Assembly: GCF_964194025.1 (NCBI RefSeq) | Contig: NC_134472.1 | Coordinates: forward strand, 9,920,001 to 9,984,000 | Direction of reading: 5' to 3' | DNA from: Convolutriloba macropyga | Lineage: Eukaryota | Length of the DNA: 64,000 nucleotides | The notes under the pieces: generated by a model | What the model was told of the DNA's origin: nothing | The model's input: only the letters and a program-made list of their open reading frames with translations | The model's database searches: none | In this document: in pieces, positions 3,876 through 55,364 of the stretch | Layout: each line of letters begins with the position of its first letter | Position numbering within the stretch: the first letter of the stretch is position 1 | Made by a program: the position numbers and the translations under genes

Positions 3876-4583
3876 TTCGGTTTTAGATAACTCCATTTTA
3901 AATAGTTAATTCCAAGGCGATCCACATGCCAAGAGAAAAGAAAAAAAGGAGAGCAAAACGGGGGTGGTAAATTCACAATTTGGAATGCGAAATACTTTGA
4001 GGGAGTTCCAAAGAAAGCCCCTTTTGGTAATCCCAAAATGACCCAGACTTGTGTTCTATTAACTCAACTTCGCAAATGTTGACCAATTCAACCATGAAAC
4101 GGCATAACTGCAAAGCGTGACCGACAAACAAATCATTCTGCTACTAAAATTATTTTGAATTTAGTTAATTGGTAGTTTTAAATTTTAGATCGTGTAATCG
4201 ATCGTTACAAGCTACAAAGATTGACTTGTAATTGATCATTATTCTTCCCTACAAGCGTCTTACTTCGCCATTTTTTTAATTTAAGTAAATTTACTGAATT
4301 TTGAACAAACTGTGATTTCCGTGTTTGCATCTTAATACATTGGAAAGTGAACTTGACTTACTTATAGTTAATTATTTTAATTGGTTTTTAAGGAGCAACC
4401 ATTTTTCAAGACTGGAATGCAATGAAAACATTGCAGATTTAATTAGCTTTGCAATTCAAGAATGGAAAACTGCCCAAAATCTAAAAATTTATTCCTTCTA
4501 TTTTTCTTTAAAAAAATTTTAATGAAAAAAATAATTTTAGTACCTGTAGACGCTTGTAATAAAAAGATCACAACGGTGCGAAA

Positions 4584-6007
4584 ATGGAATCTAAATTAAT
4601 GCTAAGAAATTTTAAACTGATTCTCTTAATTCTGATTGGTCAGTGTGTATGTGACGTGAATGTGCATTTGACACAAGAAAGCAATGGCAAGTCCGAAATA
4701 GACATTGACACAAATAATCGTGGATGTTCCCCCCAGCACGAGGTGGCTATGGGTGGATTCAGCAAGGCTAAAGTTTTCGCTAACCGCGGGGAAAAGGCGG
4801 CTGCCAAAGAGAGAATAAAGAATACGTGGGGAATAAAGCCTGAGCAAAACTACACAATGGAGAGATATCGTGAACAAATTGTAAACGGTGCAAACTATCT
4901 TTACGAGGTAAAAATCGGAATTATTTATTTTATTTCCTTAATACAATTTTTGATATGTCTCGTCAGTCAAATCAGAGAATACTAGAGTTGAAAATGTTTG
5001 TTTTAGTTTTAACTTTATTTTTAGTTTAATTTTAGTTCTTTTTTAAAAATTTTTAGTTTATAGTTTTTTTTTTCATTTTTTTTTTCATAGTTTTGCAATT
5101 TTTGATCTTGCTTGCTCGTCAAAACAGAGAGAAATAGAGTTGAATAGACAAGCCTATGTGTCGTATCGTATTAAAAGCATGCAATTGAGACCATATACGT
5201 TTCCATAAGACAGAAACAATCGTTCTTGGTATGCTTTCAAAAACCATCAAGTAAAGGACGAAACCAAATAAGCTCTCAAATGAAAGTAAAGTTTTGCTGC
5301 TGTGAAGATTAAAGAGTGACCTCAATCAACTTTCTACTTTTTTCACTGCAAAACAAAAAATAGAATTAAGAAAAACACTCCCACAGGCATCTAGTTATCA
5401 TTGCATCATTTAGATCTCTTACCACCATGCTGGACAGACCCTCCTAAATACATTTTTTGCCCGACAAAAAATCAATATTTGGCCTAGCATTATTAGCTGG
5501 TAATGATATTTGATATAGGTAATATTTGGTGGGTAATATAACCCAATGATTAAAGACGCAGTACCAAAAATTTAGAATTGGAAAAATTGTGAGTGAAGTC
5601 AAAATCTGTTTGCAAAAAAACACGTAATTTTAGTTCGGAAAAAAACCAAAGGAAAAATATCCCCATGGAAATAAACCCTATTTGACCTTTGACTAATATA
5701 AAACTGCGCATTTGTCGGAATTCACCATGCCTCGCGGGTCAGGGCTATGCCTTATTGGCCCCTAGGACTTGATATCACAACCGAACAAATAAGTGAACAA
5801 CCGAGCACCGACAGAAAGTGCAATTGGATTTATTTCCTAGATCAAGAAATTGATATATAATCTAACATAGGGTAACATTGTTACTTTTACATAATATTCC
5901 AGATCAAAACCCACGATGATGAAAGATTCAAGGTACTTGTTGATGCAACTGGATGCGGAAAAGCAAAAAGAATGGAAGTCGACGAGTGCCTGACGCCTGA
6001 GTTCTGA
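4584..6007 (+). CDS. Secreted stefin/cystatin-like protein 1 (G1), 142 aa; exons 4584-4907 and 5903-6007
   Basis: Hydrophobic signal peptide (LILLILIGQCVC), MGGFSKAK N-terminal trunk and QIVNGANY (QxVxG motif). Donor GAG|GTAAAA at 4908 and acceptor TTCCAG at 5902, phase 0. Exon 2 reads IKTHDDERFKVLVDATGCGKAKRMEVDECLTPEF*, and its end resembles the stefin C-terminus (DELTxF). Confidence 0.88.
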
Positions 6008-7067
6008 TCACGCATCGTCCTGGAATCCAGCGCATATGTGGTCAAAAAGGATCAAATGATTGTTGACAGTAGAACTGAAATCTCGTTAAATATAAATAAC
6101 TTTCGAATTTATTTGTATTAACTAATTTACCTAATTCAAAGATTGTTACTGCTATGTGCATTTTTGATTGTAGCATCTCAAATTACAGTATGTTGCATCA
6201 AAATCAATGGGCCACGAATGACATGCATTTGAAAAAGATAATCAATTTGCAAACCTGATGTAAAACTATTGAACAGGTGTGCTTAATATTTGAAGATCAG
6301 ATTTTTAACTTGATTAAATTGTCAGACATAAGTTTTCAATATTTATTATCAGAGTATGTTCTGCCGTTTTAATGCAGACACAATTTTATTCAAGAATAGC
6401 TGAAACTTAATAACCTAATATTTGAAAAAAATTTGTAAACATGTGTCATAAACGTGTGTCCCAAAAACTATTCTATCCTGTTTGTAGAAAAAAAAATTGC
6501 CGCCAAAACTAACAAACGAACAGAAACTCGGATCTCTTTTGTGAAGTGAAAGTTCTGGTTCTTAAAAAAATTTTTTAAATAATTTTTGTATAAAACTTTT
6601 TCATAAATAACACAATGGCACCAAATGCAATGATTATGAATTTTAGAACAGCATAATTAGTTAAAACTGCAAAATAAATCATCATTTGAACAACTTATGC
6701 AAGCTAGAAGACAACAGCAACCAGCTGAAAAAGCATAATTAATCCGAGTGAATAAAATCTTGTCTAAAGTTTCTGTTTTTTTCATTATTTCACGCAGTCC
6801 TATAATTTAACCAGTTAAGAGCAGCAAAGTATATGGTGTATAGTAAAGTTTACATTAAAACAATGAAATGAACCTTGTTAACTAAACACTACTAAAACTT
6901 GGAGCTGAAATGCTTGAATTATGAACCACACTGCAAAAAAATATCAAAGATCTTAAGTGTTCGTGACATTTTACCTCTTAAGAAGATGTGTTACCAGCCC
7001 TTTACTATTTCATCAAAAAAAGAACCATTATTTTGATCATTTTGTCAGGTTAGAACATAACAAGAAA

Positions 7068-10490: not shown

Positions 10491-12202
10491 ATGAAGGCTG
10501 AATTCATTTTACCCCTTGTTCAGCTATTTCTCGTGATACTAATAGAGCACTCAATATACAGTATAGAAGTTGAAATAACAAGCGAGAGCAATGGTGACGA
10601 AGAAATCGACATTAAAACAAATAACGCCCAGGTTGAGAGCTCCACTTTATGGAAAAAATCATATGTAATTATGTTCAAAACGACAAAACAAACATGGAAA
10701 ACGATCGCATTTTAAGATGAAATTCCCAGTCTTCCCGTTTTTTGACCGCTGAAATTGCTTATGACCGGTTTTGGATCGGTATTTGTAAACGTTTTTGATC
10801 AATCATTATTGCGAAGCGTTCTTGTCGGGTCTTCTCAAAAGTAGCGTTCCCCTAAAAAGCCATAGAAAGTATAATTCTCCTTAAAATACTGCTAAAAATG
10901 TGGCACCCTAACAAAACGGCCCTTTTCTTAAAAAAGCGATTAAAACAGTCGAAAGAGCTCAAAGCTGTAGTTTCCGCAACTTAATCGTTTTTGACCGAAC
11001 TATAGAGAAATACTGTTATATAGTACAACAAACAGTCGATAAAAGATCTTTCCAATAGTTTCCTCATCGATCGACCAAAGTTTTTCAAATGTTGACTTCT
11101 CAAATAGGGTGATATCATTGACGAGATCTCTTCAAAATGCTTGGAAGAGTATGGGAGGTCTGTGGCAGGATACAGCAGTGCTGAAATTCTGACATCAGAT
11201 CAAGGGAGAGATGTGAAGGAACAGATAAAGAAGACATGGGGATTAAAACCTGGTAAAAACTACACTGTGGAAAGAGTTCGAACAGAACATCACGGCGAGA
11301 ACTTTCTTTATGAGGTAATTTGATTCACTTTTAGTTCTTATTGAAATTTTGGCGGATTAAAAATGAGAAGCAAGGTGCAATGTTTTTTGCTTCTGTTACC
11401 GTTTTTGCCCACAAAATATTGTAGCGCTGTCTTTTTAAACTACGTCCCTCATTGTAAAACATTGAAACGGTCCGAAGAAGAGTGTTAGAGATTTTTAAAC
11501 AACATTGAATTCCCAAAACTATAATAAGAAAGCAACATGGAAAGGAAGTGAAATTAAAAAACAAACAAACAAATAATTCAACATAAAATGTACACGTTGA
11601 GTCAACTATTTTGAAACCCATTATCCGTTCAGGAAAGTTGGTTGAAATGAAAAACCAAATGGGTCCCTCATTGTCTGATAAATTTTTTCATCAACATAAA
11701 ACTTGTATTTAGATATTTTTCAATTCTATTTTGCTTTAACCATTCGCAGAATATGCGGACCTTCTTTAGAAGAATGCCACGGTAGAATTGTGTACATCTG
11801 TTTAAGGCAGCTGCAATTTTTTCTGTCAAAGTACACTTTCACATACCAGTAGAGTTGAAATTGGAGAGCTGGAAGGATTTTTTAAATCTATGGTTGACAA
11901 AAAGTCTGCTGAGTATTTGAAAGTATGCAAAACACGCTAGAGTATCAGTTAGCTAAACCGAGTTTCAATTAGGTTGACTAATTCCTGATTTGCCTTCAGA
12001 TGCAGAATTAACCTAAAAAAATATCAATAGAAATTAAATTTCGTAATTCAGTTTATATATAATGACACAGTTGTTTAATTGCATTGTGTTTGAGATCAAA
12101 AATGTGGATGGTGTGAGACACAAGATACAATTGAACCCTAGTGAAGGATGTGGTAGAGCCAGAAGGATGGAAGAAGATGACTGTCTCACTCCTATCGAAT
12201 AA
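10491..12202 (+). CDS. Secreted stefin/cystatin-like protein 2 (G2), ~151 aa; exons 10491-10631, 11108-11314, 12095-12202
   Basis: Signal peptide present. IEVEITSESNGDEEIDIKTNN matches G1 VNVHLTQESNGKSEIDIDTNN, and IKKTWGLKPGKNYTVERVR matches G1 IKNTWGIKPEQNYTMERYR. Last exon reads IKNVDGVRHKIQLNPSEGCGRARRMEEDDCLTPIE*. All junctions are GT-AG, phase 0. The last acceptor is a GAG at 12092-12094, with an in-frame CAG alternative ending at 12070. Confidence 0.85.
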
Positions 12203-12970: not shown

Positions 12971-15900
12971 ATAAAACTAGCTGAAAATTATGAAGTAAAA
13001 CCATCTCGACCCAAAAGAGGAGATCTTTCTCAATTCTAGGCAGTAAATGCAAATTTTTGAACTTCGAGTTTCTGCTTCTGGAAATTTTCTATGAAACGTT
13101 CGATTTTTTTACCACTAATATGATAGAAAACAGCCAAATTGATGGCATTTCTCTTTTTAAAATACAAAAATGATTTCAACCAAAAACATTTGTGAATAAC
13201 AGAAAAAGTAGATCGAGTTCGGTTGCGTCACTTTAATGTTATCAGACGTGTCTAGTGACATTAAAATGCTGGAATTTGATCAAAACACTGTAATCTTTTG
13301 CTCACAAAACAATTTTTTGAATCATTTGATCTGATTTCAAACGTTGATGGAAAACAAAGGAAAAAATTAATGAAAATTACAAAAAATGTTTCGCAATGGA
13401 ATTTTTGTTCAACGACCGAGGTTATGTTGATATTAAACAAAATCAAATTTTATTATCTGTACTTGGAAAAGGCGTACTTTTTTGGCTTCAGTTTTACTTT
13501 TTCAAACAAAAAATAGAGTAATGATTCACTGAAGCTCATAGATATTTACAAAATTTTAAATAGCAATGCATGCTTCCTTCACAATTTTTCAATGTTCATT
13601 TGTATAATTGGTGAAAGATCTAAGTTTCATTGATGAGATTCACTGGGAGCAGAAACCAGGTGCACCAACTTATATAGCAAAGAGGAATTCTTTCTATATT
13701 TATTTTTTGTGATTTATATTGATTGATACTGAAAGTTATTTTATTTTTTAAAACAAAAAAATCGAAGTAATTTTGCTCAACTTCCGTGATAATTGCTACT
13801 AACAGAAAATATTTATTAGCTAAATGATCACAGTAAGGTTCACAAAAATTGAGAAATTTATTATGACATGCAGTAGCACATCTTTGTAGTAGAAATGTTG
13901 ATTTATGAGCTTATGTATTTTGTCTTGAAGAAAACGATTAAAGAATATTTAAACAAAATGTATCGACAAAATCTCTAATTGTACATTAGAAGAAAAAAGC
14001 TAAAACCATTTTCTCAAATAGATAAAACTAGCTGAAAATTATCTCGACCAAAAAGAGGAGATCTTTCTCAATTCTAGGCAGTAAATGCAAATTTTTGAAC
14101 TTCGAGTTTCTGCTTCTGGAAATTTTCTATGAAACGTTCGATTTTTTTACCACTAATATGATAGAAAACAGCCAAATTGATGGCATTTCTCTTTTTAAAA
14201 TACAAAAATGATTTCAACCAAAAACATTTGTGAATAACAGAAAAAGTAGATCGAGTTCGGTTGCGTCACTTTAATGTTATCAGACGTGTCTAGTGACATT
14301 AAAATGCTGGAATTTGATCAAAACACTGTAATCTTTTGCTCACAAAACAATTTTTTGAATCATTTGATCTGATTTCAAACGTTGATGGAAAACAAAGGAA
14401 AAAATTAATGAAAATTACAGAAAATGTTTCGCAATGGAATTTTTGTTCAACGACCGAGGTTATGTTGATATTAAACAAAATCAAATTTTATTATCTGTAC
14501 TTGGAAAAGGCGTACTTTTTTGGCTTCAGTTTTACTTTTTCAAACAAAAAATAGAGTAATGATTCACTGAAGCTCATAGATATTTACAAAATTTTAAATA
14601 GCAATGCATGCTTCCTTCACAATTTTTCAATGTTCATTTGTATAATTGGTGAAAGATCTAAGTTTCATTGATGAGATTCACTGGGAGCAGAAACCAGGTG
14701 CACCAACTTATATAGCAAAGAGGAATTCTTTCTATATTTATTTTTTGTGATTTATATTGATTGATACTGAAAGTTATTTTATTTTTTAAAACAAAAAAAT
14801 CGAAGTAATTTTGCTCAACTTCCGTGATAATTGCTACTAACAGAAAATATTTATTAGCTAAATGATCACAGTAAGGTTCACAAAAATTGAGAAATTTATT
14901 ATGACATGCAGTAGCACATCTTTGTAGTAGAAATGTTGATTTATGAGCTTATGTATTTTGTCTTGAAGAAAACGATTAAAGAATATTTAAACAAAATGTA
15001 TCGACAAAATCTCTAATTGTACATTAGAAGAAAAAAGCTAAAACCATTTTCTCAAATAGATAAAACTAGCTGAAAATTATCTCGACCAAAAAGAGGAGAT
15101 CTTTCTCAATTCTAGGCAGTAAATGCAAATTTTTGAACTTCGAGTTTCTGCTTCTGGAAATTTTCTATGAAACGTTCGATTTTCTTACCGCTAACCGCGA
15201 GTTTCGCGATACATCGAGAGCGCATAAATGTTCCCATCCTTTGAACTTATTTTTGCTATATGATTTTTATTCCAGCATGGTTGTTTTTTCAACTGAATGT
15301 GGCCAATCAATTTCTCTTGTGAGACAAATTGATTTGAGTAGCTTTGCAAACATTTGCAGAACTGACTCAACCAATGAAGAAATGTATATATATTTTTTTC
15401 CTTTCCGGAGCAAGAGTTTTAAAATGGGTCCGTTTATTCTGCACGCTGATCTACTCCATACACGTCAATTAAATAGCAACTTGCCACTTTATTGTTACTT
15501 TATTTTAATGTTACTTTATTTTTATTTTACTTTATTTTAATGCCACCTTATTTTAATTTTTCTTTATTTTAAAATAAGTAAATTATTCGGTGAATTTCAT
15601 CAACAATTTCGAAGAAAACAGCCAAATTGATGGCATTTCTCTTTTTAAAATACAAAAATGAATTCAACCAAAAATATTTGTGTATAACAGAAAAAGTAGA
15701 TCGAGTTCGGTTGCGTCACTTTAATGTTATCAGACTTCTCTAGTGACATTAAAATGCTAGAATTTGATCAAAACACTGTAATGTTTTGCTCACAAATCAA
15801 TTTTTTCAATCATTTGATCTGATGGAAAAAAAAGGAAAGAAATATTGAAAATTACAAAAAATGTTTCGCAATGGAATTTTTTTCAACGCACGAGGTTATG

Positions 15901-18466: not shown

Positions 18467-21078
18467 GGCACAATTTCGCTAATATAATTCAAAATAAGTT
18501 AAAATATTTAACGGCAGAGTGTTGTTGTTACCGTCAGAGATAGAAGAGCGTTGCTGAATTGTTTGATTGAAGTTTTTTTTGGCTAAAATTTTGGATAAAA
18601 TTTTCAAAATTCAAACTTCATCAAAAATAGCACAAAAATTGCTTTTTTTGGTCCACTTTGTTAAAGTTTGCCAGACGTAGTGACCTAGAAACAATAACAC
18701 AGACTCCCTAATCTCAAGAAGAGCTTTAGTTGCAATTAGACGCCGTATGAAAGTCTTCTGGAATTAAAACTTTGCCGTTTTCTGCAGATTTAGATCGATC
18801 ATTATACAAAATGTATCTTTTTTTTCAATATTTGAAGAATTCCACTCAACAATTGGTCTAATTCGCAAATACTTGGATCACTTGGTCGGTTTGTTGGGCG
18901 CGCGAAAAAATCAGGGAGAGGTTCGATAATATCATGGACTCTTAGAATCAAAGACTTTTTGGTTTTTATTTTGATGCTGCCTTTTTTCAAAATATTTTGC
19001 TTTTGTTTTTTTTTAATGTTAATTACTGACAATATTTTTTTATTCACAGCTCCGTTAATGACAAATCCAATTTAAGTAAATTTGAGGCCAAATGTAGATA
19101 CGGTTTGTTTTCAGAGAACCGAAGGGTTTTTATGGCTTTCAGGAAGAGATTTAGTAAAATTTAACTGAATTCTTGTCTTTTGCCTTCAATTTTTGTTCTT
19201 CTGGCAGTCTGATTTTTAGGTTAAACCACTCAAAGATCTAAATTTCTTCCTCAAGATGTGCAAGTGAACCTTTTCAATCCGTTCGATTGTTACCTAATGT
19301 CTTTTATGTTATTGAATGTATTTGTTTTTAGGAAATTTTGGTGATTTTTTGAACTTGTCAATATTTTATATTATTTTAGTCAATATTTTGCTTATTCTCA
19401 TTAAGTACAGGTCAAAGTTTCCTGCTTATAGAATAGAAGCTTGTTTTGCGGCCGAATTGTTTTAAAAGAAGGTTTTCTTGCTTTCGGTACTACGAGTTTT
19501 CATACAAAATTTTCTGATTTTTGTGCATAATACCCCATTTTTGCTGTTGTTCTGTTTCTTTTGTAAATTGTCATATTATTTAAGTATCTAACGGAAAAAA
19601 CTTTACAACATTTGAAACTGAACATAATTTTTGTTTTCATAGCATATGGTTTGAAGCGCTGTGACACCGTTCTCTTGCAGAAATTGGTAGAGATTTTTGT
19701 TTTTGCCCTTTACTTGTTGTTAATTTTTGTTGTCATATGCCAAATATTTTGTAATTAAAGGTCTCAGCGGCCAACAACTATAGATAACAAGTGAACTACA
19801 ATAGTTTTTTATCGGTAAATAACTAATGGTTGATTTGACTTTCGAATTATAAATTTATAAAAAAAAAAGAGAGTAATAGTATTCTTAAACTTATCCCATT
19901 TTGTTCTGGTTTGCGTTTTTTTTTCGTATTTCACAATGTTGCATCATTTTTGAAACTTCGCATTATGTAGAGCTTTTTTAGTGTTTTGGTGAATCAAACA
20001 TAAAATTCTCTGTTGTTTAAACGTTTTGACTGATGTCTTCAGGGCTTAGACAATTTGTTTCAGAAGAATTTTGCGAAATTTCGATACTTTTCAAGCTTTG
20101 TGGTTCTTTTTGCTGTTAATTTGTGACAGTCGTTTTACAAAAAAATGTAATAATGATCAAAGGAGACGCAATTGAAGATGTTATATTCTCGCGGTTTATA
20201 TATAACAAATTTAATGGCTTCAAAACTGGTTTCGTAAAGTTGTTTGTGAAACTTATTTGTTCAGCTTGTATTCATAGTCTTATAATGTGATTTTTTTAGT
20301 CTTATAATTCAATCTCATTAAAAAAAAGTCGCAATTGGATTTCCAAGTAGTTGCAAGACAGACTGTCTACTCCTTTAGTCGAAAGCTTTTGTTGGCTATG
20401 AATTTTGAAAATATTTGTTTTTATTAAAAAAAAAGAGATAGATTTTTGAGATCTGCCAATTTTTGTTTGATAAATTGTAGCTAAGCATCTCTATATGCAA
20501 TTCACATCATTTATCTATTGAAATACAAATTGCTCTTCATAACGGTTTTATTTTCCTCTAATGCTCTTTCTTCTTGGAACAACCAGTTTTCATAAAAACA
20601 ATTTTCGTGATTTTTGCAAATTTGCCCCTTTTTTTGTAGGTTTTTGTTTTCTTTTCACAGTATCACAATAATGAGCGTCATTTGAATTACAAATGTTGTC
20701 ACCTGCAAAAAATGCAACCAGAGATTTTTTGTTTTTAGCGATCAGCTCAATGTTTTATTGATTGGGTGGACATCGTTTTCGTGCATAATTTTTCATTTTT
20801 GCCTGTATTTGTCGTTCTTTTTGTAGCCGCATGACATATTCTGGATAATGAAATGTCTCAGTCACTCTCTATTGAGTTATAAAATACTCTCTCCAATATT
20901 TCATTTGATGCCTAATGCTTCTAATCAGTTCGAACTTAATTCTTTTTTTAAAAAAAATGTTTCAATAAAGTTAAATAAAGACTTTTTGCCAAGTCGCATT
21001 GAGAAAAGTCCCATATTTTGTTTTAAAAAGTACTGGCTAATCTTCGTAGTATAAATTTTATCTGATGTCATTTTGATT

Positions 21079-24000: not shown

Positions 24001-25024
24001 TGTAACTATTTTATATTTATTGCGTCTTTTCTGGTAGTCATATTATGGTAGCCACGAGTCTCATAGGTCCTCTTGAGTAGTTTGTTTTAGTTTTTTAGTA
24101 GTCTGTTGAACGATATGTTGATATGTTAATTTTTATTATCTCTTCCTCATTTGGTAGACAATTAAGTGAAAAATGTAGATGAGCGGGGTCAAAAATTAAT
24201 GTGCGAACGCACATTACCGAGCCTCCTTGTTTCATTTCTTTATTTCGATACTGTATCAAAGGGAAAAATGTATTTTTAGGCAAATTTGAACTAAAATCGC
24301 TAAGTGGTTATTAGTGGTTTTCCAAAAATGGACAAGGAGTTTTGGTCTTAATTAATATTTGTAACTATTTTATTTTTATTGCGTCTTTTCTGGTAGTCAT
24401 ATTATGGTAGCCACGAGTCTCATAGGTCCTCTTGAGTAGTTTGTTTTAGTTTTTTAGTAGTCTGTTGAACGATATGTTGATATGTTAATTTTTATTATCT
24501 CTTCCTCATTTGGTAGACAATTAAGTGAAAAATGTAGATGAGCGGGGTCGGAAATTAATGTGGGAACGCACATTACCGAGCCTCCTTGTTTCATTTCTTT
24601 ATTTAGATACTGTATCAAAGGGAAAAATGTATTTTTTGGGCAAATTTGAACTAAAATCGCTAAGTGGTTATAAGTGGTTTTCCAAAAATGGACAAGGAGT
24701 TTTGGTCTTAAATAATAATTGTAACTTTTTTATTTTTATTGCGTCTTTTCTGGTAGTCATATTATGGTGGCCACGGGTCTCATAGGTCCTCTTGAGTAGT
24801 TTGTTTTAGTCTTTTAGTAGTTTGTTGAACGATATGTTGATATGTTAATTTTTATTATCTCTTCCTCATTTGGTAGACAATTAAGTGAAAAATGTAGATG
24901 AGCGGGGTCGGAAATTATTGTGCCAAAGCACATTACCGAGCCTCCTTGTTTCATTTCTTTATTTAGATACTGTATCAAAGGGAAAAATGTATTTTCAGGC
25001 AAATTTGAACTAAAATCGCTGAGT
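21079..25024. repeat. 359-bp tandem array, 11 copies
   Basis: GGTTATTAGTGGTTTTCCAAAAATGGACAAGG recurs every ~359 bp. The ORF track repeats the same 62-aa pseudo-ORF at 21586, 21945, 22304, 22663, 23022, 23381 and so on. Confidence 0.98.
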
Positions 25025-25849
25025 GTCACTCGTTTACACACTATTCTACTAATACAATTCTAATCTTGAAACATGGGTCGTGAAAAGCCCGACAAAATCG
25101 AGCATGTATACTAAATTCTTCGAAAACTGGCTGCATAATTAAATTTTCTGCCGAACGATAAACAATATGCTGTCATGTTACTTTGATAGTTGGCAAAAAA
25201 TACTTACAATGTTATCATGACGGAAATCAAAGTGGCAAAACAATCTGAAACAATCCCGGTTATTTTCTTCCATTTGACATAGGTATTAAGTTGCGATAAT
25301 TACGGAAATTAACATACAAAGGTATATCACAGAATTAGTAGCTAAAAACAAAACTATAAACCTATTAGCATATCTATTAATTTCCATAACGCTCATTTTC
25401 AGATTTATATGAGCAGTTTTTTTTCTTTTACTTTTACTTGAAGAGCACTTTTTTCGACCTTGTAGTTGGAGTATTCAATTATTGCGGCTGCTAGGGATTC
25501 ACTAATAAAAAATGAACGAGGTGAAGTTAAATTGCAATGTTATAAAACAAAAACATAAAACTTTATCCCTCAAAATTCCATAAAATTCGATAAAATTCGA
25601 TGAATCAAAAAGCTCTTTATATAGTCCACTAATTATATAGCAGACAAAACTCTGAAATTATTTCATGTGGTTTTTTTGCATGAATTTAGTTCGATTTGTT
25701 TAAACGTAAACCCAGTTAAAATTGATGCGGTCGCTGTATTGTTAGCATTTTTTAGCTTCTGACGCGTTCTGAGACAAATTTTTCGATCTCTTGTTTTTCT
25801 GATCATTTTCATTTTGGAATACTCAAAAAATACATAACTGGTGGTGGTC

Positions 25850-26837: not shown

Positions 26838-29470
26838 ATGAGAGGTAATTGTTTGGTTGTGTTTACTGTGCTAATTAACACAGTTCTGGGTAACAGCCCG
26901 ATGAAACCTGAAGAATACATTAAGAAGTTTGAGGATTGCAAGGATGGTTTCGGGAATCAACTTGGAGACGGTTTCGGAAAACCAGTAGAACTGGGAACAC
27001 TGAAAGAACGTTTTGAAGCTTCCAAGGCTATTCGGACTGCTTTTCCACTGGTTCCCGAAGGAGTGAGAATCGAGCTTATGTCTGTAAACACAGATAATCA
27101 ACGGGTTCTCTACCAGGTAGATTATTGTACTAACTCTCTGTAATGATCTCATACTTTTAGTTAAAAAATATACAATCAGAGAGTTACTAACATTACTTGG
27201 TAGATAATGGCAATAACCCTTGTTTGGTACAAAGTTGCATGAATAATAGGAGAATTTATTAGAATTAGTAAGTAAGGTAGGCATAAAACAGACATAATTA
27301 CCCGGATTAGATGGAGAACTCCGTTTTATAATCTTAATACATGCAAGAGCGTTCCAAAAATTGCCCAACGCTTTTATTTTTGCGCCCCTTCCACTAACTA
27401 CTGCCCGGGTCGAGGAATTTACCCGAAAATAACATTTGAGAATAAAAAGAATGAAAAATACATCTAAGAATATCGAATTTTACTTACCAAAATGGCTTAA
27501 TTTAATTATGACAACATGACAACATTCAGTAATGGCGTGATCTATAGTGGCATCTATACGCTCAAGCGTACTGATCTACAAGCCTACATCAATACTTCCA
27601 TACTGATCAATTCTAAAAGCAATTCTATTATTTTTTTCAGTGCTTGAAATATCAGAACACAAATCTTACCAGTTTTACAAATCTTGGTCAAGACTTCGGT
27701 AACACTTACAAGCTGATTCCCCAGTCAACACCAACTTTTCAAAAACTTTGAGATAAAAATATTGGCAATTGAAAAAACTACGTAACGTGCCACGATTTCG
27801 GGATATTAAGTGCAATGCACTATTTGTAATGCTTTTTCCAGTTTCTTCATTGGAGGTATAAATATCTTTTTAGAGCAAAATCTGGCATCGTTTGTTCAAA
27901 GATTTAACTTGCAGACAATATTTTTCAATAGAAAACTGAAAATTTAGTAAGTTGTGACTTGAAATAGAAACTTTTTTCATAAAAGGGTCATAGTCTGTTA
28001 TAGAAAATTTCAATTGTTCATAGTTGAATGCAATGAAGAACAGGAAGTTTACTCTCGCTGCAAATAACTGTTTTTACGAGTCAAATTTTTGGGATATTGA
28101 GATAAATGTCTTGTCGTAAATTTCCACAATAATGATATCAAGATATCAACGAAGTATAAAATTAACGGAAAAATGTCAATGTTGCTAATAAAAATTTCAG
28201 CTTTGTGAAGTCTTTTTCACTGCCAAGGTCTTGAATTAGTAGTTTGAAGTTTTAAACTTTTTTTAAAATAACAGGACAGTATCAATAACTCTTCCTCTAT
28301 TTGTTTATTAGTGGTTGAAAAAAGCAGTTCATAAGCACGGCCGCGCGTTTAGGTTACGTGATTAATTGGTATTTAAAATTAATATGTGAACTAAATTATG
28401 TAAGAATAATTCTATAACCTAACACAGCAGACACCGCGTTTCAAAATTGGTTTTTCATGCTCCAGGTTGCTCACATCATAAATGTTTACTTTATCAACAT
28501 TAAAAGTCTTGCTTTTTGACTTAGGTAAGAAAAATAGTATACAAAATGAAAAATGGGAAAATATGCAAAAATAGTATGTCCAGCTTAACTCTCTGCTACA
28601 AGGTTTGCTTTATCTGCGATTCAAACTCTGCAAGTTAAAAACAATATGCTACATCAATACCCATCGAATTAAAAATGACCGTATAGATAACTATTTTTTC
28701 CTGATATAAAAATTTTATACAATTGTATTGTTCATAATCGCTATTTGCAGAATAAGCGCAAAAACGTTATCTTGCCTAGATGTTAGCGCGGTTTTTATGT
28801 TTAAAAAAGTTATCATGAGAAGTCGACGCAATTATTCCCTAACATTTCTTTAATTAAACGAATTAACCCTCTCAAAAACAAAAAGAAAACAAGTTTTTTG
28901 CTGTAAATTTGTAGCTCAAATTACTGTTATCAGTTAAGTTTAATGTTTTATGTGATTCAATAATCTGCAAAATATCTTTTTTTTGCTGAATTCTGATTAT
29001 TCATACGGGAAGCAGCTTGTTGACGAGAATATATTTCTTGCTTTGAACCTCGTTTGCTCTTTTGATTCAGATCTTGTAAGCTCTGATTTCGAGAATGAAT
29101 AACTAAAAACTCGTGTTTTTTTCCGTTTGGTTTCTATATAAATTTCTAGGTGTTGGATCCGTTTTCTGATTTTGATTCTGCAGTGAATTCATTTGTCACG
29201 TGACCTATCTTCTATTTCAATATTCATTTAAAAATGCAACTGAAAAATCAACCTATGGTAACTAGACAATTTTTGCTGCCAGGTTCAATTAAAATTCTAT
29301 CAGAAAATTGTTACAGTGCCACCGATATATTAAATTTAATCTGTTTCAGTGGTTTGTGTTTTCAGGTTAGCGACCTCAAGCGACACAGATTCAAAGTCTT
29401 AATTCAAGATCAAACAATGGCAAGAGCAAAGAGAATGGATAACAACGATTGTCTGGACGAAAGTTTCTGA
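26838..29470 (+). CDS. Secreted stefin/cystatin-fold-like protein 3 (G3), 127 aa; exons 26838-27116 and 29366-29470
   Basis: Signal peptide (CLVVFTVLINTVLG) and DC...GDGFGKPVE. Donor CAG|GTAGAT at 27117 and acceptor TTTTCAG at 29365, phase 0. Exon 2 VSDLKRHRFKVLIQDQTMARAKRMDNNDCLDESF* aligns without gaps to G1 exon 2 (12/34 identical). AATAAA at 29508. Confidence 0.85.
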
Positions 29471-38928: not shown

Positions 38929-39692
38929 ATGAGATTTCAAAACATTGCCTGCGCCGTATTTGTGCTGATCACAACTCTCAAAATGTCGAGATGCCAGATT
39001 GATCGGAACGCATATATCACCCAGCATACAAATTGTGTTGACAACTTTCCAGAAGAGTTCGGAGATGGTTCAAGTATTAGAGAGCCAGCGACACTAGAGG
39101 CACGGTTTAATGCATCTAGAGACATTCGAAGAATTTTTCAACTAATGCCAGAGGGAGTGAGAGTTGAGCTCGCGAGTGTCAATGGATTGAACCCCTTTTA
39201 CCAGGTAAAGCTATTTTTTATATTGAGTAAAATCAATTAATATTGCAGAAAGAAACTAAAACCTTCAAGATAGAGCTAAAAATTAAGTAAGAATGCTTTA
39301 CAACGTCCGAAACTAGAATAATTTTGGGTCTTTCCCATTATGCCCCCTCCTCAAATGAATAATAGCACCCCCATTATGGTATATTTACCATGATTGGCGG
39401 GGAGGGGGGGGGGGGCTATAGGTTATCTGACCACTAAGCTGTGGGGGGGGGGCTATAAAAGGAAATACCCATAATTGTGCGCTTAATTTTCCTGCGTCAG
39501 GTGAGAGATCTAGAGATGCGCAGATACAAGATTGAGATACATGGAGACATGGTCAAAGCGAGGATAATGGATCCAGAAGAGTGTCTAAAGTCATTCAATG
39601 ATGCTCTCAACAGTGCAGGTCGCAGTGTGAGCGGAGATTCGTTGATGAAACCGGATGAGAGAATTCTGGCGCTTTTAGACTTCGATTTATAA
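38929..39692 (+). CDS. Secreted stefin/cystatin-fold-like protein 4 (G4), 155 aa; exons 38929-39204 and 39501-39692
   Basis: Signal peptide present. RFNASRDIRRIFQLMPEGVRVELASVN matches G3 RFEASKAIRTAFPLVPEGVRIELMSVN. Donor CAG|GTAAAG at 39205 and acceptor GTCAG at 39500, phase 0. Exon 2 reads VRDLEMRRYKIEIHGDMVKARIMDPEECLKSF plus a 31-aa tail. Confidence 0.88.
39326..39470 (+). mobile_element. MITE (~145 bp) in the G4 intron
   Basis: Imperfect terminal inverted repeats GGGTCTTTCCCATTATGCCCCC and GGGGGCTATAAAAGGAAATACCC. Confidence 0.65.
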
Positions 39693-41993: not shown

Positions 41994-44900
41994 ATGATGC
42001 ATCTTTGGGTCATCTTTGCTTTGATAAATTTCTGCTATGCCCATAATGAAGAGTTAACAGACGCTGAGAAATTTTTTCGGGAACTGGAAAACTGCAAGCC
42101 TGGGTTCGTCAACTATGAAGCAAGATTTCCCGGATTCTCAAAACCAGTCGAAATAAAAAAGGTTGTGGATCGATTCAATGCTGGCAAAGAGATTTACAAA
42201 GTTTTTCCACTGGTGGGAGCAAGCATACGGATCGAACTCGTGAGCACCAAGCGGCAAGGATATGGACCCAATAGAAATGACATTGTTCTCTACCAAGTAT
42301 GTTAATCTGACGTATATACGAAATCTCGTTGAATAAGAGCTGAACTCAGAGTCCATGTTCTCTGAATTTCTATGAATAAGAGAAAAATTCAGAATGCACT
42401 TCTGAATCAGCTCTGATTCAAAATCAAAATAAGGAACTTTTCTCAACACTACAGACACACATAAAAAACTTGACATCGGTTTATTAACCGTTTTTATTCG
42501 GTTTTGGATGAAAAGGACAAAAAAACAGCCGAAAAAAAATCACAATTTTGATGTCATTCTGCTATGGTGAAGCAGAATGATATTTGTTTGCAAAGGTTTT
42601 GAGCTCAGAAAACCCTTCATAAATATTTTTCCTCCTGCATTGGTTCAAAAACAGATTGAGCTAAGGAAATTTCAGTGTTATTAGCCCTTCACAAAAAAAA
42701 TATAACAATTTAAAGTGCAAAAGTGAAGTTTTCTTAACAATAGCTTATTTCATTCACATAGCGTTTTAAAATCGACTATTTTTTTAATAAACTCTTGTGA
42801 TATGTGAAAAAGTAAAATCAGAAGTAAAATTCCTCTGCCAAAAAATTGATAGGAAAATTCTGTTTACATAATCACTAATTTTCCGTATGTCAACCAAACG
42901 TAAATGGCCAAAATTGCATTAATAAAACTAGCCCAATACAAAAAACACCACTTAACAAATTTTGGGACTTATCGAGCGTTTTTGTAGGTCTGAAATAAAA
43001 ATAACTGAAAAAAATGTGGTAACTGACAAATTAAAAATCTCAAATTACAAACACTAACTGCTATTTTTGATGTCGCATTGAGCTCAACCTCTTAAATTTT
43101 ATAAGTTGCCGAAAAAAAGTGAGAGGGTTCTACAGCACAAAGAGCCCGATCAAAAGAATACAAAAAACCAAACAAACTGAAATAAAAAATATTCTATGTT
43201 TTTTTTTAAAAAAAAATGTCTCTTTTTTCGCCGCAAAAAACCAACAAAAATCATAGATCTACTATTTTTGTTAACGAAGTAACCTCAAAAAGTGTGTTTT
43301 TAACTTGACTCGAGGAAATTTCCGACAACCTTTAATCTGTATTATAAATTTCGTCAAAATCTACAGCCATTGAATGAACTTGTACTTCCCAACTTTTATG
43401 TATTTATGTACTACCTGTCTTTCTGCTAGTTGGAAGAATTTTTCGCGTATATCAAAATCAGAGTTTCTCGCAGAACTAAACAACGTGGCGCAAATTTTGG
43501 TTTTGGTTGGGTTCTAAAAAAATCATCGTCTCCTTCCAACTCAGCGTCCTTTTAAGCACTGAGAAGACGCAAAGAAGCAACAAAAAAACGATCAAAAACC
43601 GACAGTTTCTTTTGAAAAAAAACGACGTTCGAAACGACGAAAAAGATCTAAAACCGATGCTTCCACTGGAAAAAAAACGACGTAAGAAACGACAAAAAAA
43701 CGACGAATAAATGATCATTTCTGGCACGCAAAAGATGACTTAATAATAAGAATAATAAATTGTTTCCACCAGTCAATAAGTAGCTTCACAATTACCTTTA
43801 CAAATACAATCACATATTTGACTGTGGGAGAGCACTATTGGGCTGATGGCCCGTTCTCAAGTGTCTCATTCAGTTTATCTGGATGAAAGTGATTCAAAAT
43901 GAAAAAAAGAGGAAGCACTGTTTGTCACGGTACCATTGAACCTAGCAGTAAAATCCTTATTCTGGTTTTGGAACGCCTTTGAGTTGTGATATTAAAACTC
44001 ATACAACTGTTCGATTATGTCCTCATTACCCAAAATATAAATATCTAGAAACTGATGAGAGAATTTTTTTGTTTCGGCATTAGATATGTTTTCAATCATT
44101 TCGATTATTACGTCATCGTAACCTAGAAGCATTCTTAAGACCCACCTTATCCTAACTATTAATGAAAAACTGTGAAATAGATTTTCACCTAGAGTTGTTT
44201 TGTTTTTAATCAACCGCTTGCTTTTTTCAGGCAGTTTGGCATTGAGGAACCCTTTGAAATAGGTGAAACATTATTTTGTCCCATTATGTTTTTTACTGTT
44301 TGCTGGAGTACCTCATAGGCATGTAATTCTGATGCTAATTAGATCCTATGTTTTATTCTTTCTTCAAAAGTGCTTTTCAGCTTTTTTCGATGAAAAATTA
44401 GCCGCACGATACGTTTGAGAACTTTGTCTATTTCCCTTATTGTTGTGATTGTTGTTGACCCGTATATCAAGACTACGTATTGTACTATTGGTTGTATGTA
44501 TGTTCTAAATGCTTTTATCATCTGTGATTCTCTTAAAACATTTCTCAGTTTATAAAAGATAGAACAATTCGACAAAAATTTTGTGACCACAAGCATTGAG
44601 TGCTTTGAGAAACGTAGTTCATTATCTAACGTGATGCCCAGGTATTTGAAACTTTGTTTTTCCTCAATTTTAGTGTTTTTTATGAGTGTTCTTGACACTT
44701 CATTTTTTTGATTTTTTTCATTACAAAAAGCATGCTTTTTGTTTTTTCCTTGTTAGGCGTTAGTTTGTTTTTTTTATGAGCCAATCATTGAGGTTATGTA
44801 GGCTTTGTTCTGATCATCGTCATTTTTCGATGCAGAGCTTCTGGTCTTCACAACAGTGTCATCGGCTTATAAAATAACATTTGATTTTTCTGGGACAAGC

Positions 44901-47478
44901 TTAAGTCATTCATGTATATAATAAACAAAAGAGGGCCAAGAATTGAACCCGGTGGCACGCCTAGTTCTATAAGCTTCAGTTTGGAATATTTTTCTCCCAA
45001 TAATGTATATTGCATTCGTTTGGACAAATATGTTTTTAAAATGTTGAATATAGAACCACGTAGACCATATCTATAACCCTTTGGCAGTAAAGTGTTTTGA
45101 TTAACAGTATCAAAAGCTTTCTTTAAGTCTAGAAAGGTGCATTTGGTTTTCTCGCTGTTGTTGTTGAGATTTGATCTTATTTCTTCTATTAAAGTTGCAA
45201 TTTAACTGTGCTCTTCCCGTGCCTGACGCCAAATTAAGAATCTGAGAGAATTTCAAAAACATTTAGGGAGTTTTGAATTCGATCACATATAATCCGCTCA
45301 AAGACTTTCCCTATAATTGGTAGCAACGAAATGGGCCTGAAAATTGATGGGTCATCTTTATTTCCATTTTTAAAGAACGGTAAAACTTTTGCAATCTTTC
45401 TATTTCTCTGGGTATTTTCCAATTTCTATGCATCTGTTAAACAATAGTTGTAAAGAGCTGTTAAACAGTCAGAAAATTTTTAATGAAAAAATTGTTCAAG
45501 TTACAGCAATCAAGGCTAAACTTGTTTTTACAGTTGTTGATAGCGTACTTTACGTCATTTCCAGATATCGATTTTAGAAACCTACTTTGAATCTGTTTTT
45601 CTATCCTAACGGCACTTCTTGTTAAAGATTCTGCATTTAATTTTTGCCCCATGTTTGGGAAGAACTCGTTAATATCTTCTATTTTATTTTGTGAGCAAAA
45701 AATAATAGAGGACTCTGAATTGCCGGCTAAAGAACTATAAAGCTGAAAAAAGTCTTTCTGTTTTTTTTACCGAATCGGTTTTAAGTAGATTTTGACAAAA
45801 AAGTTTGTTTTTTAGATCTGATGAGCGATTTAAGACTTTTACAATTTTTTTTGAAAATTTTTGTTAATTTGCGGACTTCCAGTTGCATTTGTCAGTTTCT
45901 TAAGACCACGTTTTTTCATCGCTAAGTTTCTAACATCATTGTTGATCCAATTTTTGTTCTTTTTTCGTGTAAGATGTTCTTCAAGGAGGTGACTGTTTAA
46001 TGCTTCAGTGAGCATTTCGGGAAAATTTTTGAAGGCGCTGTCTATTGGTAAGAGTTCTAAACTACTTCTGTGGACCTCTAATTGATACCTGAGATCCTTT
46101 TTGAGTCTTTCTCTCGGATTTGGATTATCTGGATTATGCCAATTGCGTTTTTTTAGAGCTTTAATTTACTTTTCTGGTCTGCCATCGAGGTCAAAAGAGC
46201 CATCTACCTTATGATGATCTGTTATACAGGTTGATTTAACTTTTGTTTTAATAAAAAAGTTAGAAAATATTGCGTCAATGAGCGTACCTTTGCAATTTGA
46301 TACCCTTGTTGGCTCATTATTATTAGATATAAAAAGACGTTTTCCGGCTTAAAAGCTTTTTAAAATTTCGGCGTTTTTGCTGTTTAATAAAAAATTAACA
46401 TTAGAATCCCCACAAAGTACGTCTTTTGTTTCGGGGTCAACCATTAGGCTGTCGAGATATCTATCAACCGTCAAGAAATTGGCTTCATTAGTGCAATTTG
46501 GTGGCATGTAAATTCACGAGAACCAGATTTGGTCTTTTATGGTTTTGATGGCAACTGTTAGTAGTTGAACGGAATTGGTTTCTAATTTTTTAACTATCTG
46601 ACAATTTATGTTATTTTTTAAGAAGAATGCAACAGCTCCACCTCTTTTTTACGATTGCTAGATATAATTGTTCGATAACCATTCAAAGAAAAACAGTTAT
46701 TGTTGTAGCTAGGACCTAAACGACGGAAATTAATGACAACGACATCAAAACGACGAAAACGATGATTTCTTACAGAAAAAAGCCGTTTTTTCGTCGTTGT
46801 TCTCAACACGGGCAGAACGAAAACATTGGTTAAATCTCGATTGCCTCTCGGATTTATTTCTCACTTTAAACTAAACCAGACAAAAGCAGAGTCTGAATCA
46901 GAAAAAACTTCATAGTCTGATTCATAGTCTGAATCAGAGAGTATTAGAGCAAAATGTGACATAAGCAGACTCTGAATAAGTTCTGAACAGTTTCTGAAAA
47001 ATTTCCTGATTCAGTGCAGAATTTTACTGTGAAATTGAAAATCAGGTTCGGGAAAAACACTTTGATTTGAACTATAAGAGCTGTTATCACATGTTTCTAT
47101 AGGACTGTAAATAATTCTTGATTGAAATTTGAATGACTTTGGCAGATTGAGGTTCCAGATCTAATTCAATGATGTTCATCTTTCGGGTTTCAACTATTGG
47201 GTTTAAGAATGTGATTTAACTTTTTTAAACAATTTTTTGTTTTGTAATTTTAGGTGTCTCACTCTTTCGGCAGATACAAAGTACAACTGCATAATGGACT
47301 GGCCAAAGCGGAGTTACTACAGCCTGGCACTTGCTTAGAACCATTTGGTTACGATAGCAACATTGACAACAGTATTATTGACAATCAGAACATTGACAAC
47401 AAGATTATAGACATGAACAACAATCGACCTTTACAAAGTTACAGGGTTCCACCCGAAGAATGGAAGGGTTATGAATGA
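41994..47478 (+). CDS. Secreted stefin/cystatin-fold-like protein 5 (G5), 175 aa; exons 41994-42296 and 47254-47478
   Basis: Signal peptide MMHLWVIFALINFCYA and NC...FPGFSKPVE. Donor CAA|GTATGT at 42297 and acceptor TTTTAG at 47253, phase 0. Exon 2 reads VSHSFGRYKVQLHNGLAKAELLQPGTCLEPF plus an IDN-repeat tail. Confidence 0.86.
43741..46715 (-). mobile_element. Decayed, 5'-truncated non-LTR retrotransposon (APE endonuclease + RT, CR1/L2-like), antisense in the G5 intron
   Basis: Minus-strand APE motifs: VLCGDSNVNF, EPTRVSNCKGTLIDAIF, ITDHH. RT motifs: FRPISLLPIIGKVFERII, FLDLKKAFDTVN, GVPPGSILGPLLFIIYMNDL, *ADDT (YADD with a stop, ~44858-44869), YLGITLD. There are many stops and frameshifts and a (TTA)n-like tail near 43741. 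Confidence 0.93.
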
Positions 47479-54657: not shown

Positions 54658-54987
54658 ATGAGGCTTGAAACTTGGGTTATCGGCGTCATCGCTGTTTTCA
54701 TAAATGAGTGCGATGCACAAGCGATGATGGAGGAGTTAACTGAGCCTGAGGCATTTATGCTGGAGTTGGAAAGATGCGAGGCGCAATTCCAAGAGAGCCC
54801 TGATTTCCATTCAAGATTTCTTGGTTTCTCGAGACCAGTCGAAATGAAAAAAGTTGTGGAACGTTTCAACGCTGGCAAAGAAATTTACAAGGTTTTTCCG
54901 CTGGTGGGAACAAGAATACGGATCGAACTTGTGAGCATTAAGCAGGAGGGATTTGGAGACAATAAAAATTTTACTTATCTCTACCAA
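54658..54987 (+). CDS. Secreted stefin/cystatin-fold-like protein 6 (G6), exon 1 only (110 aa); closest to G5
   Basis: Signal peptide present. GFSRPVEMKKVVERFNAGKEIYKVFPLVG is nearly identical to G5. Donor CAA|GTATGT at 54988. No second exon is visible because the contig breaks at 55146. Confidence 0.85.
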
Positions 54988-55145
54988 GTATGTTTTTTAT
55001 TAAATGATAAAATTTTTTGACAAACTCTGCGAACTTTCAAATATTTGTGTCATTTAAAAAAAAATTAACGATCAAACTTCATGAAAGAGGTTCTGCTTGT
55101 TAAGAAATGTAGCGGATGGGATTTTTGATTGCAGATATTATTGAC

Positions 55146-55345: not shown

Positions 55346-55364
55346 ATTGGGTATTTGTTTTTAG

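What the first reader, a model, noticed from the sequence alone, without database searches (positions are those of the whole stretch)
4878..5920. Shared intron sits at the stefin intron-2 position, tying motif-less paralogs to type 1 cystatins
Seen: all six genes have a phase-0 donor right after Y[EQ] (4908, 11315, 27117, 39205, 42297, 54988). In G1 this reads QIVNGANYLYE|I. Known: human stefin B has a phase-0 intron at QVVAGTNYFIK|V (after codon 56), the same offset from the motif, and stefins end in DELTxF, versus DECLTPEF in G1. Stefins are typically cytosolic and lack signal peptides and disulfides. Inference: the family is a stefin lineage that gained secretion independently of type 2 cystatins. 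The other stefin intron (after codon 22) is absent here.
Basis: partly seen in the sequence, partly recalled or inferred. Interest (0 to 1): 0.7.

Follow-up and report, generated by a model that had tools for sequence, protein, structure and literature searches.

The report
Secreted stefin-like gene family in acoel
A tandem cluster of small secreted-protein genes in the acoel worm Convolutriloba macropyga shares one intron that sits exactly where the second intron of animal stefin genes sits. With weak sequence and fold matches, this makes the family most likely a diverged, secreted offshoot of the stefin protease inhibitors, a kind already known from flukes and myxozoans.

Summary
All six genes have a GT donor at the stated coordinate, in phase 0, right after a Y-E or Y-Q codon pair. 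NCBI's own spliced models use the same junction for five of the six genes.

Human CSTB exon 2 is Val23-Lys56, with Gln46, Gly50 and Tyr53. Its intron 2 therefore follows the eleventh residue counted from the Q of QxVxG. G1 is the same (QIVNGANYLYE|I).

- **Sequence:** the signal for cystatin is weak. Pfam gives no hit. The best solved-structure match is a myxozoan stefin at E 0.02. A HMMER search of 1.84 billion proteins found nothing.
- **Rival family:** a PepSY protein scores as well or better, at E 0.0036 with the G1+G2 profile.
- **Fold:** AlphaFold models of G1 and of motif-less G3 both place three type 1 cystatins first (Z 7.6-8.9). Type 2 cystatins and PepSY structures score about 5.
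- **One family:** the two subfamilies are homologous (hhalign E 2e-8).
- **Not done:** no phylogeny was possible.

Secreted stefins are already described in flukes, myxozoans and some protists. Cestode stefins keep only intron 2. I rate this a new variant of a known kind, with moderate interest.

The parts
4584..4907 (+). G1 exon 1 (108 codons). It encodes a signal-peptide-like N-terminus, an acidic spacer, Cys48, the Gly57-Gly58 trunk, a helix, and QIVNG (4875-4889) followed by ANYLYE.
4908..5902 (+). G1 intron, 995 nt, GT..AG, phase 0. It follows the eleventh residue counted from the Q of QIVNG.
5903..6007 (+). G1 exon 2 (34 codons plus stop). It ends with DECLTPEF (5981-6004).
10491..10631 (+). 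G2 exon 1 (47 codons): signal peptide and acidic spacer. It is followed by an extra phase-0 intron (10632-11107) that lies upstream of the domain.
11108..11314 (+). G2 exon 2 (69 codons). It ends ...EHHGENFLYE, so the QxVxG motif is degenerate. The donor is at 11315.
12095..12202 (+). G2 exon 3 (35 codons plus stop). It ends DDCLTPIE.
26838..27116 (+). G3 exon 1 (93 codons), with no QxVxG. It ends ...RVLYQ. The donor is at 27117.
29366..29470 (+). G3 exon 2 (34 codons plus stop). It ends NDCLDESF.
38929..39204 (+). G4 exon 1. NCBI's model starts at the second Met (38983). The upstream in-frame ATG at 38929 adds a signal-peptide-like N-terminus. The donor is at 39205.
39501..39692 (+). G4 exon 2 (63 codons plus stop), with EECLKSF followed by a C-terminal tail.
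41994..42296 (+). G5 exon 1 (101 codons), with a long variable first hairpin. The donor is at 42297.
47254..47478 (+). G5 exon 2 (74 codons plus stop), with GTCLEPF followed by an Asn/Ile-rich tail. The 4957-nt intron carries minus-strand retrotransposon-like ORFs.
54658..54987 (+). G6 exon 1 (110 codons). The donor is at 54988. No exon 2 is found in the window, and the gene is not annotated by NCBI.

Best explanation
**What it is.** The window is from chromosome OZ077303.1 of the acoel Convolutriloba macropyga. It carries a tandem, same-strand family of at least six small genes, and an alternate contig carries a seventh. Each gene encodes a signal-peptide-bearing protein with one compact helix-on-sheet domain of about 90 residues.

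**Most likely origin.** The family most likely descends from a classical stefin (type 1 cystatin) gene. That ancestor kept stefin intron 2, lost stefin intron 1 and acquired an N-terminal signal peptide. In G2 the signal peptide still lies on its own exon. The family also acquired a conserved Cys pair: one Cys before the N-terminal Gly and one inside the C-terminal [DE]-C-L-x-P-F motif.

**How the members probably work.**
- G1 keeps the N-terminal Gly-Gly and a QxVxG first hairpin. It is predicted to be a secreted, tight-binding inhibitor of papain-like cysteine peptidases, using the usual cystatin wedge.
- G2-G7 have lost QxVxG. Their first hairpins differ in length and sequence. They probably no longer inhibit in the canonical way and may bind other targets.

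**Shown.** The gene models and the shared phase-0 intron; the identical offset to CSTB intron 2; homology among the paralogues; and the stefin-like ranking of the predicted folds.

**Inferred.** Descent from stefins, secretion, the disulfide and any inhibitory activity.
For: **Intron.**
- The shared intron is in phase 0 at the same alignment column in all paralogues.
- G1 has Q+4 = G, Q+7 = Y and the intron after Q+10, exactly as CSTB (Gln46, Gly50, Tyr53, Lys56|Val57).
- Stefins of early animals have two introns at conserved positions, while type 2 introns vary.
- Flatworm stefins have last exons of 123-132 nt, and cestode stefins retain only this intron.

**Sequence.**
- The best solved-structure match to G1 is the stefin Smolstatin (E 0.02). 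It aligns without gaps through RYREQIVxGxNY.
- Dictyostelium cystatin A2 also appears (E 0.73). No type 2 cystatin is listed.
- The protein-language-model search puts PF00031 clusters first (0.91 and 0.90, with 197-200 shared features).

**Fold.**
- G1 model (pLDDT 70.6): 8 of the top 10 Foldseek hits are cystatin-superfamily.
- G1 model, VIA-align: Z 8.9 CsStefin-1, 8.3 Fasciola secreted stefin, 8.1 stefin-A scaffold. Type 2 cystatins score 5.0-5.9 and PepSY structures 4.7-5.1.
- G3 model (pLDDT 81.6): Z 8.4, 8.1 and 7.6-7.9 for type 1 structures, then a gap to 5.8.
- In the G1 model QIVNG sits in the hairpin between strands 2 and 3.

**Family coherence.** G1/G2 against G3-G7 by hhalign gives probability 95%, E 2e-8, over 82 columns.

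**C-terminus.** The consensus is [DE]-C-L-x-P-F. It resembles the stefin D-x-L-x-Y-F. Tyr-to-Pro replacement is reported in ctenophore stefins.

**Context.** Acoela are reported to lack type 2 cystatins (second-hand).
Against: - There is no Pfam Cystatin hit for any member. The only sub-threshold Pfam hits are PepSY and DIX.
- HMMER against 1.84 billion representatives found only the protein itself.
- The whole-family profile finds neither cystatin nor PepSY among solved structures.
- The G1+G2 profile hits a PepSY protein at E 0.0036, better than any cystatin.
- Foldseek on the G3 model lists no cystatin near the top. The Atlas shape search gives PepSY and cystatin similar TM scores of about 0.5.
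- The best Z values of 8-9 are only slightly above what unrelated models typically reach (tool note).
- The models rest on very shallow alignments of 7-10 rows.
- The LP motif of the second loop is absent.
- A signal peptide and a conserved Cys pair are not stefin features.
- No phylogeny was built and no RNA data were available.
Confidence: 0.6

Rival explanations
1. The family is a PepSY-like or otherwise unrelated helix-on-sheet domain. It might have been acquired horizontally or evolved convergently. On this reading, QIVNG in G1 and the intron position are coincidences.
For: - Pfam PepSY is the best, though sub-threshold, family hit for G1 (13.6 bits against a cut-off of 24, E 0.084).
- PepSY protein 9vy3 scores E 0.039 with G1 alone and E 0.0036 with the G1+G2 profile, over 57 residues covering the helix and three strands.
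- The Atlas shape search lists PepSY clusters at TM about 0.5.
- Another note of this scan reports candidate bacterial-type genes in this genome (untested here).
Against: - PepSY structures score only Z 4.7-5.1 against both models, compared with 7.6-8.9 for stefins.
- No PepSY signal appears for G3-G5 or for the whole-family profile.
- The conserved Gly-containing segment before the helix has no counterpart in the PepSY match.
- By my own estimate, an exact match in position and phase to one of two stefin introns would occur by chance in roughly 1-2% of cases, given about 95 codons times 3 phases.
- PepSY domains are mainly bacterial (own knowledge).
Confidence: 0.15
2. The family derives from a type 2 (secreted) cystatin. 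That ancestor lost the insert between strands 3 and 4, both C-terminal disulfides and the PW motif. The signal peptide is then ancestral, not newly gained.
For: - All members have signal-peptide-like N-termini.
- Type 2 cystatin introns vary in number and place in invertebrates, so an intron here is not excluded.
- Type 2 structures do align to the models at Z 4.2-5.9.
Against: - The domain is as compact as a stefin: 26-28 residues from Q to the second loop.
- Type 1 structures outrank type 2 by 2-3 Z units in both models.
- Only type 1 sequences appear in the solved-structure sequence hits.
- The Cys positions do not match the type 2 disulfides.
- The C-terminal [DE]-x-L-x-x-F motif is a stefin feature.
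- In vertebrate type 2 genes the first intron lies at the start of QxVxG, ten codons upstream. I recall this from the cystatin C and salivary cystatin gene papers and did not check it here.
- Acoels are reported to lack type 2 cystatins.
Confidence: 0.12
3. The family is stefin-derived but is not an independent gain of secretion. It would belong to the same old lineage as the cystatin-like stefins of flukes and myxozoans.
For: - The best sequence hit is the myxozoan cystatin-like stefin Smolstatin.
- The Fasciola secreted stefin 6I1M is among the top structural hits.
Against: - Cystatin-like stefins are defined as lacking the C-terminal D/E-x-L-x-Y/H-F motif. Their disulfides are Cys39-Cys66 and Cys69-Cys95.
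- This family keeps a related C-terminal motif and has a different Cys pair, one N-terminal and one C-terminal.
- The authors of those papers already consider the fluke and myxozoan origins independent of each other.
Confidence: 0.08

Closest known systems
Classical stefins (type 1 cystatins, MEROPS I25A), e.g. human stefin B (CSTB)
   Same: - A compact domain of about 95 residues.
- An N-terminal Gly. G1 has Gly-Gly.
- QxVxG in the first hairpin (G1 only), with Tyr at Q+7.
- A phase-0 intron after Q+10.
- A C-terminal [DE]-x-L-x-x-F-like ending.
- The best structural matches to both models.
   Different: - A signal peptide is present.
- A conserved Cys pair is present.
- There is no LP in the second loop.
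- Stefin intron 1 is absent.
- The last exon is 6-9 codons shorter.
- Most paralogues lack QxVxG.
- There is no significant sequence match.
Cystatin-like stefins of flukes and myxozoans (FhCyLS-2, PDB 6I1M; Smolstatin1, PDB 8AND)
   Same: - A stefin-type scaffold that carries a signal peptide and, often, disulfides.
- Multigene and highly divergent within a species.
- They give the best sequence hit and a top structural hit.
   Different: - They are known from parasites, whereas this animal is a free-living acoel.
- They lack the C-terminal D-x-L-x-Y-F region, while this family keeps a related motif.
- The Cys positions differ.
- They keep QxVxG, while most paralogues here have lost it.
Cestode stefins (Taenia, Echinococcus), gene structure 174+(37)+123
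   Same: A single phase-0 intron. The first exon has 58 codons and the last has 40. Stefin intron 1 is lost and intron 2 retained, as in G1 and G3-G6.
   Different: They are cytosolic, carry canonical motifs, and have no tandem expansion.
PepSY domain (PF03413)
   Same: A helix followed by antiparallel strands, with the sequence pattern ...Y-x-[FY]-[ED]-I-K-T-x-D...F-K-V-x-V-D-A-[ST]-G. E is 0.0036 with the G1+G2 profile.
   Different: - The score is below Pfam's cut-off.
- The structural Z is lower (about 5).
- The match has no counterpart of the conserved Gly-containing N-terminal segment.
- The domain is mainly bacterial.

Membership tests
Cystatin superfamily (Pfam PF00031 / MEROPS I25) | Significant match to the family profile | tested here: not met
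   There is no PF00031 hit for any exon or full protein, even at E 10. The best cystatin-type sequence hit is E 0.02 at solved-structure scale. The 1.84-billion-protein HMMER search found nothing.
Cystatin superfamily (Pfam PF00031 / MEROPS I25) | Cystatin fold: N-terminal strand, a helix, and four long antiparallel strands wrapped round it | tested here: met
   This was tested on predicted models only. The models have pLDDT 70.6 and 81.6. Type 1 cystatins rank first at Z 7.6-8.9, rmsd 2.4-3.5 A over 77-87 residues. Z is only slightly above background, and Foldseek on the G3 model does not agree.
Cystatin superfamily (Pfam PF00031 / MEROPS I25) | Conserved N-terminal Gly and QxVxG in the first hairpin | tested here: inconclusive
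   A Gly is conserved in nearly all members (the G-F-S-K motif). QxVxG is present only in G1 (QIVNG, 4875-4889) and is lost in G2-G7.
Classical stefins (type 1) | Two phase-0 introns at conserved positions: after codon 22 and after codon 56 of human CSTB | tested here: inconclusive
   The intron 2 position and phase match exactly. Intron 1 is absent, because exon 1 is continuous. Cestode stefins show the same state.
Classical stefins (type 1) | No signal peptide and no disulfides | tested here: not met
   All N-termini have a hydrophobic core, with a 10-residue Kyte-Doolittle mean of 2.4-3.2. SignalP was not run. A conserved Cys pair is present. Bonding of that pair was not tested.
Classical stefins (type 1) | C-terminal D-x-L-x-Y-F and LP in the second loop | tested here: inconclusive
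   G4-G7 have [DE/T]-C-L-x-[PS]-F in register. G1 and G3 have one extra residue. LP is absent in all members.
Classical stefins (type 1) | Groups with type 1 sequences in a phylogeny | not tested
Only type 1 proteins appear among the sequence hits.
[quoted passage not shown] 2023) | Obligatory signal peptide on a stefin-like sequence that lacks the C-terminal D/E-x-L-x-Y/H-F motif; typically two disulfides (Cys39-Cys66, Cys69-Cys95) | tested here: not met
   The definition is quoted. A signal peptide is present. However, a related C-terminal motif is kept, and the Cys positions differ (one N-terminal, one C-terminal).
Type 2 cystatins | Domain of about 120 residues with an insert after strand 3, two C-terminal disulfides, and PW in the second loop | tested here: not met
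   The domain has about 90 residues, no PW, and Cys residues elsewhere. Type 2 structures score Z 4.2-5.9.
PepSY (PF03413) | Profile score above the gathering cut-off (24 bits) | tested here: not met
   G1 scores 13.6 bits. There is no hit for G3-G5. PepSY structures score Z 4.7-5.1.

The most novel reading that the evidence does not exclude
An acoel, a lineage reported to lack type 2 cystatins, rebuilt a secreted repertoire from its cytosolic stefin gene. It did so by capturing a signal-peptide exon and adding a new N-to-C disulfide. It then expanded the gene in tandem and freed the first hairpin from protease inhibition. The result would be a family of secreted binding proteins on a stefin scaffold. 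This would be a third, independent origin of secreted stefins, and the first in a free-living bilaterian.
Probability: 0.3. Interest if true: 0.6.

Novelty: new variant of a known kind. Interest (0 to 1): 0.42.

Why it matters
If the stefin origin holds, it shows that cytosolic stefins were recruited to secretion repeatedly, and not only in parasites. It would also show that a conserved intron can trace ancestry after sequence similarity has faded below detection. The cluster would be a compact example of a protease-inhibitor scaffold evolving into paralogues without the inhibitory motif. It also gives a name to five proteins that NCBI currently labels 'uncharacterized'.

Tried and rejected
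**Searches that found nothing useful.**
- Pfam on single exons and full proteins gave no cystatin hit.
- Word-index protein searches with G1 exon 1, a G3-G6 profile and a G1+G2 profile found only products of this locus.
- HMMER against 1.84 billion representatives found only the protein itself.
- A metagenome scan found no relative.
- The whole-family profile against solved structures found nothing relevant.
- Rfam found nothing in the window.
- No RNA runs exist for this stretch, so the splice junctions could not be checked with reads, and read laying was not used.
- The Atlas feature search with G3 found nothing.
- A paper search for the stefin A N-terminal peptide found nothing. The resemblance I recall between G1's GGFSKAK and stefin A's N-terminus therefore stays a recollection, not a test.
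- The supplement of the Smolstatin paper is not held. I could not confirm that Smolstatin's second intron is in the same column.

**Readings rejected.**
- The DIX hit (E 0.09-0.17) is noise.
- G2's extra intron is not stefin intron 1. It lies upstream of the domain, between the signal/spacer exon and the conserved Cys.

- Joined spliced models of G2, G6 and the seventh gene were not built or searched. They entered alignments as separate exon rows.
- The N-run at 55146-55345 was not filled from the alternate contig.

Full report
**Source.** The G1 product is identical to NCBI XP_075246149.1, 'uncharacterized protein LOC142339774' of the acoel Convolutriloba macropyga. It lies on chromosome record OZ077303.1. 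Earlier notes of this scan had suggested this organism, and the protein record confirms it.

**Observation.**
- I read 4300-6300 and translated the two G1 exons.
- Exon 1 (4584-4907) ends ...QIVNGANYLYE. GT follows at 4908. The intron ends in AG at 5902. Exon 2 (5903-6007) starts IKTH and ends DECLTPEF.
- All exons are multiples of three and all introns are GT..AG.
- NCBI's stored spliced proteins for G1, G3, G4 and G5 begin with my exon-1 translations and end with my exon-2 translations, and the lengths add up.
- G2 is annotated as 151 aa over 10491-12202. This fits three exons of 47, 69 and 35 codons. Its extra intron lies before the domain.
- G6 is not annotated and has no exon 2 in the window. 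An N-run starts 158 nt after its donor, and I left it unfilled.
- An alternate contig of the same species (L002) has a candidate G6 exon 2 about 660 nt after the donor. It also has a seventh gene with the same ...LYQ|VS junction.
- G6 exon 1 is 97% identical between the two contigs, against 79% for the upstream flank. This suggests constraint.

**One family.**
- BLAST does not link exon 1 of G1/G2 to exon 1 of G3-G6, but the second exons match weakly.
- MAFFT aligns all members coherently. The order is a Cys, then G-F-S-K, a helix, a strand, a variable hairpin, L-Y-[EQ], the intron, [IV]..., R-x-K-[VI], a loop, A-x-x-M and [DE]-C-L.
- hhalign of G1/G2 against G3-G7 gives probability 95%, E 2e-8, over 82 columns, with the intron aligned.
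- The shared intron is therefore inherited once. It counts as one character.

**The stefin reference.**
- Two CSTB mutation tables give intron 1 at c.66|c.67 and intron 2 at c.168|c.169. Exon 2 is Val23-Lys56, with Gln46, Gly50, Tyr53 and Lys56.
- G1 has the same spacing: G at Q+4, Y at Q+7 and the intron after Q+10.
- The HMMER alignments of G1 to two stefin-type proteins run without gaps from the motif to 11 or 12 residues beyond G, so the column is not in doubt.
- Stefins of early animals are reported to have two introns at conserved positions, while type 2 introns vary in number and place.
- Table 2 of PMC4390278 lists stefin gene structures. Schistosoma japonicum is 75+102+129 and Schmidtea is 66+84+132. 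Cestodes are 174+123, which means intron 1 is lost and intron 2 kept.
- The state seen here therefore has a precedent.
- By my estimate, a single intron hitting one of two stefin sites in the same phase by chance is about 1-2% (roughly 95 codons times 3 phases).

**Is it a cystatin at all?** Sequence evidence is weak.
- Pfam gives no Cystatin hit. It gives only sub-threshold PepSY and DIX hits.
- Among solved structures, the best hit for G1 is the myxozoan stefin Smolstatin (E 0.02). A PepSY protein follows at E 0.039, and Dictyostelium cystatin A2 at E 0.73.
- With a G1+G2 profile the PepSY hit improves to E 0.0036, while the cystatin hit stays near 1.
- The whole-family profile finds neither.
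- HMMER over 1.84 billion representatives finds only the protein itself.
- The language-model search puts PF00031 clusters first for G1 (0.91 and 0.90) and finds nothing for G3.

**Fold.**
- The G1 model (pLDDT 70.6) has a short strand, a helix and four strands. QIVNG lies in the first hairpin.
- Foldseek's top rows for G1 are mostly cystatin-superfamily. The best is E 0.018 at probability 0.98.
- VIA-align over 48,161 chains puts three type 1 structures first (Z 8.9, 8.3, 8.1). Next come plant and tick cystatins at 5-6 and PepSY-type proteins at about 5.
- The G3 model (pLDDT 81.6) adds an N-terminal helix that carries the conserved Cys.
- VIA-align again ranks type 1 structures first for G3 (8.4, 8.1, 7.9, 7.6), with a gap to 5.8.
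- Caveats: Foldseek on G3 shows no cystatin preference. The Atlas shape search gives PepSY and cystatin similar TM scores. Z near 8 is close to the usual best score for unmatched models. The alignments behind the models are very shallow.

**Type 1 or type 2.** The features that favour type 1 are:
- the compact domain;
- the structural ranking;
- sequence hits to type 1 proteins only;
- the intron;
- the C-terminal [DE]-C-L-x-P-F, compared with the stefin D-x-L-x-Y-F. Tyr-to-Pro replacement is known in ctenophore stefins.

The Cys pair does not match the type 2 disulfides or those of the Fasciola secreted stefin. I recall that vertebrate type 2 genes have their first intron at the start of QxVxG, but I did not verify this here.

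**What is known.**
- Signal peptides on stefins are described in several protists, in flukes and in myxozoans, where they are called cystatin-like stefins.
- This family differs from that definition. It keeps a C-terminal motif and has other Cys positions.
- It occurs in a free-living acoel and has expanded in tandem, with loss of QxVxG in most copies.

**Verdict.**
- I put the stefin origin at about 0.6.
- The rivals are PepSY-like or unrelated (0.15), reduced type 2 (0.12), and the same lineage as the parasite cystatin-like stefins (0.08).
- No phylogeny was built.

Noticed in passing
window 21079-25025 and 56220-62361: Two satellite arrays lie between and after the genes. The first has a 359-bp unit in 11 copies, each carrying a 62-aa minus-strand ORF. 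The second has a 120/241-bp unit in about 51 copies.
   Followed up: no
window 42297-47253 (G5 intron), ORFs 44339-44698 and 45234-45652 on the minus strand: The 4957-nt intron of G5 holds ORF fragments with motifs I recognise as those of non-LTR reverse transcriptases. Pfam gave no hit at E 0.01.
   Followed up: partly
window 10632-11107: G2 alone has a phase-0 intron between the signal-peptide/acidic-spacer exon and the domain. This may be a trace of how the signal peptide was acquired. G1 has the same spacer without the intron.
   Followed up: partly
window 38929-38982: NCBI's G4 model starts at the second Met and drops an in-frame, signal-peptide-like N-terminus that starts at 38929.
   Followed up: partly
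window 55146-55345 and 55346-56200: A 200-N run lies just after the G6 donor. The sequence after it does not match the alternate contig L002, and G6's exon 2 is missing from the window. The N-run was not filled.
   Followed up: partly
L002 18714-19004 and about 19867-19965: The alternate contig carries a seventh family member with the same LYQ|VS junction and a C-terminal GECLRPF.
   Followed up: partly
window 13042-15540: A tandem duplication of about 1038 bp carries repeated ORF pairs (13261-13516 and 14299-14554).
   Followed up: no
window about 5957 (G1) and about 12146 (G2): G1 and G2 carry a third Cys, in a G-C-G at the tip of the predicted second loop. It has no partner in the conserved Cys pair, so it may be a free thiol.
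   Followed up: no
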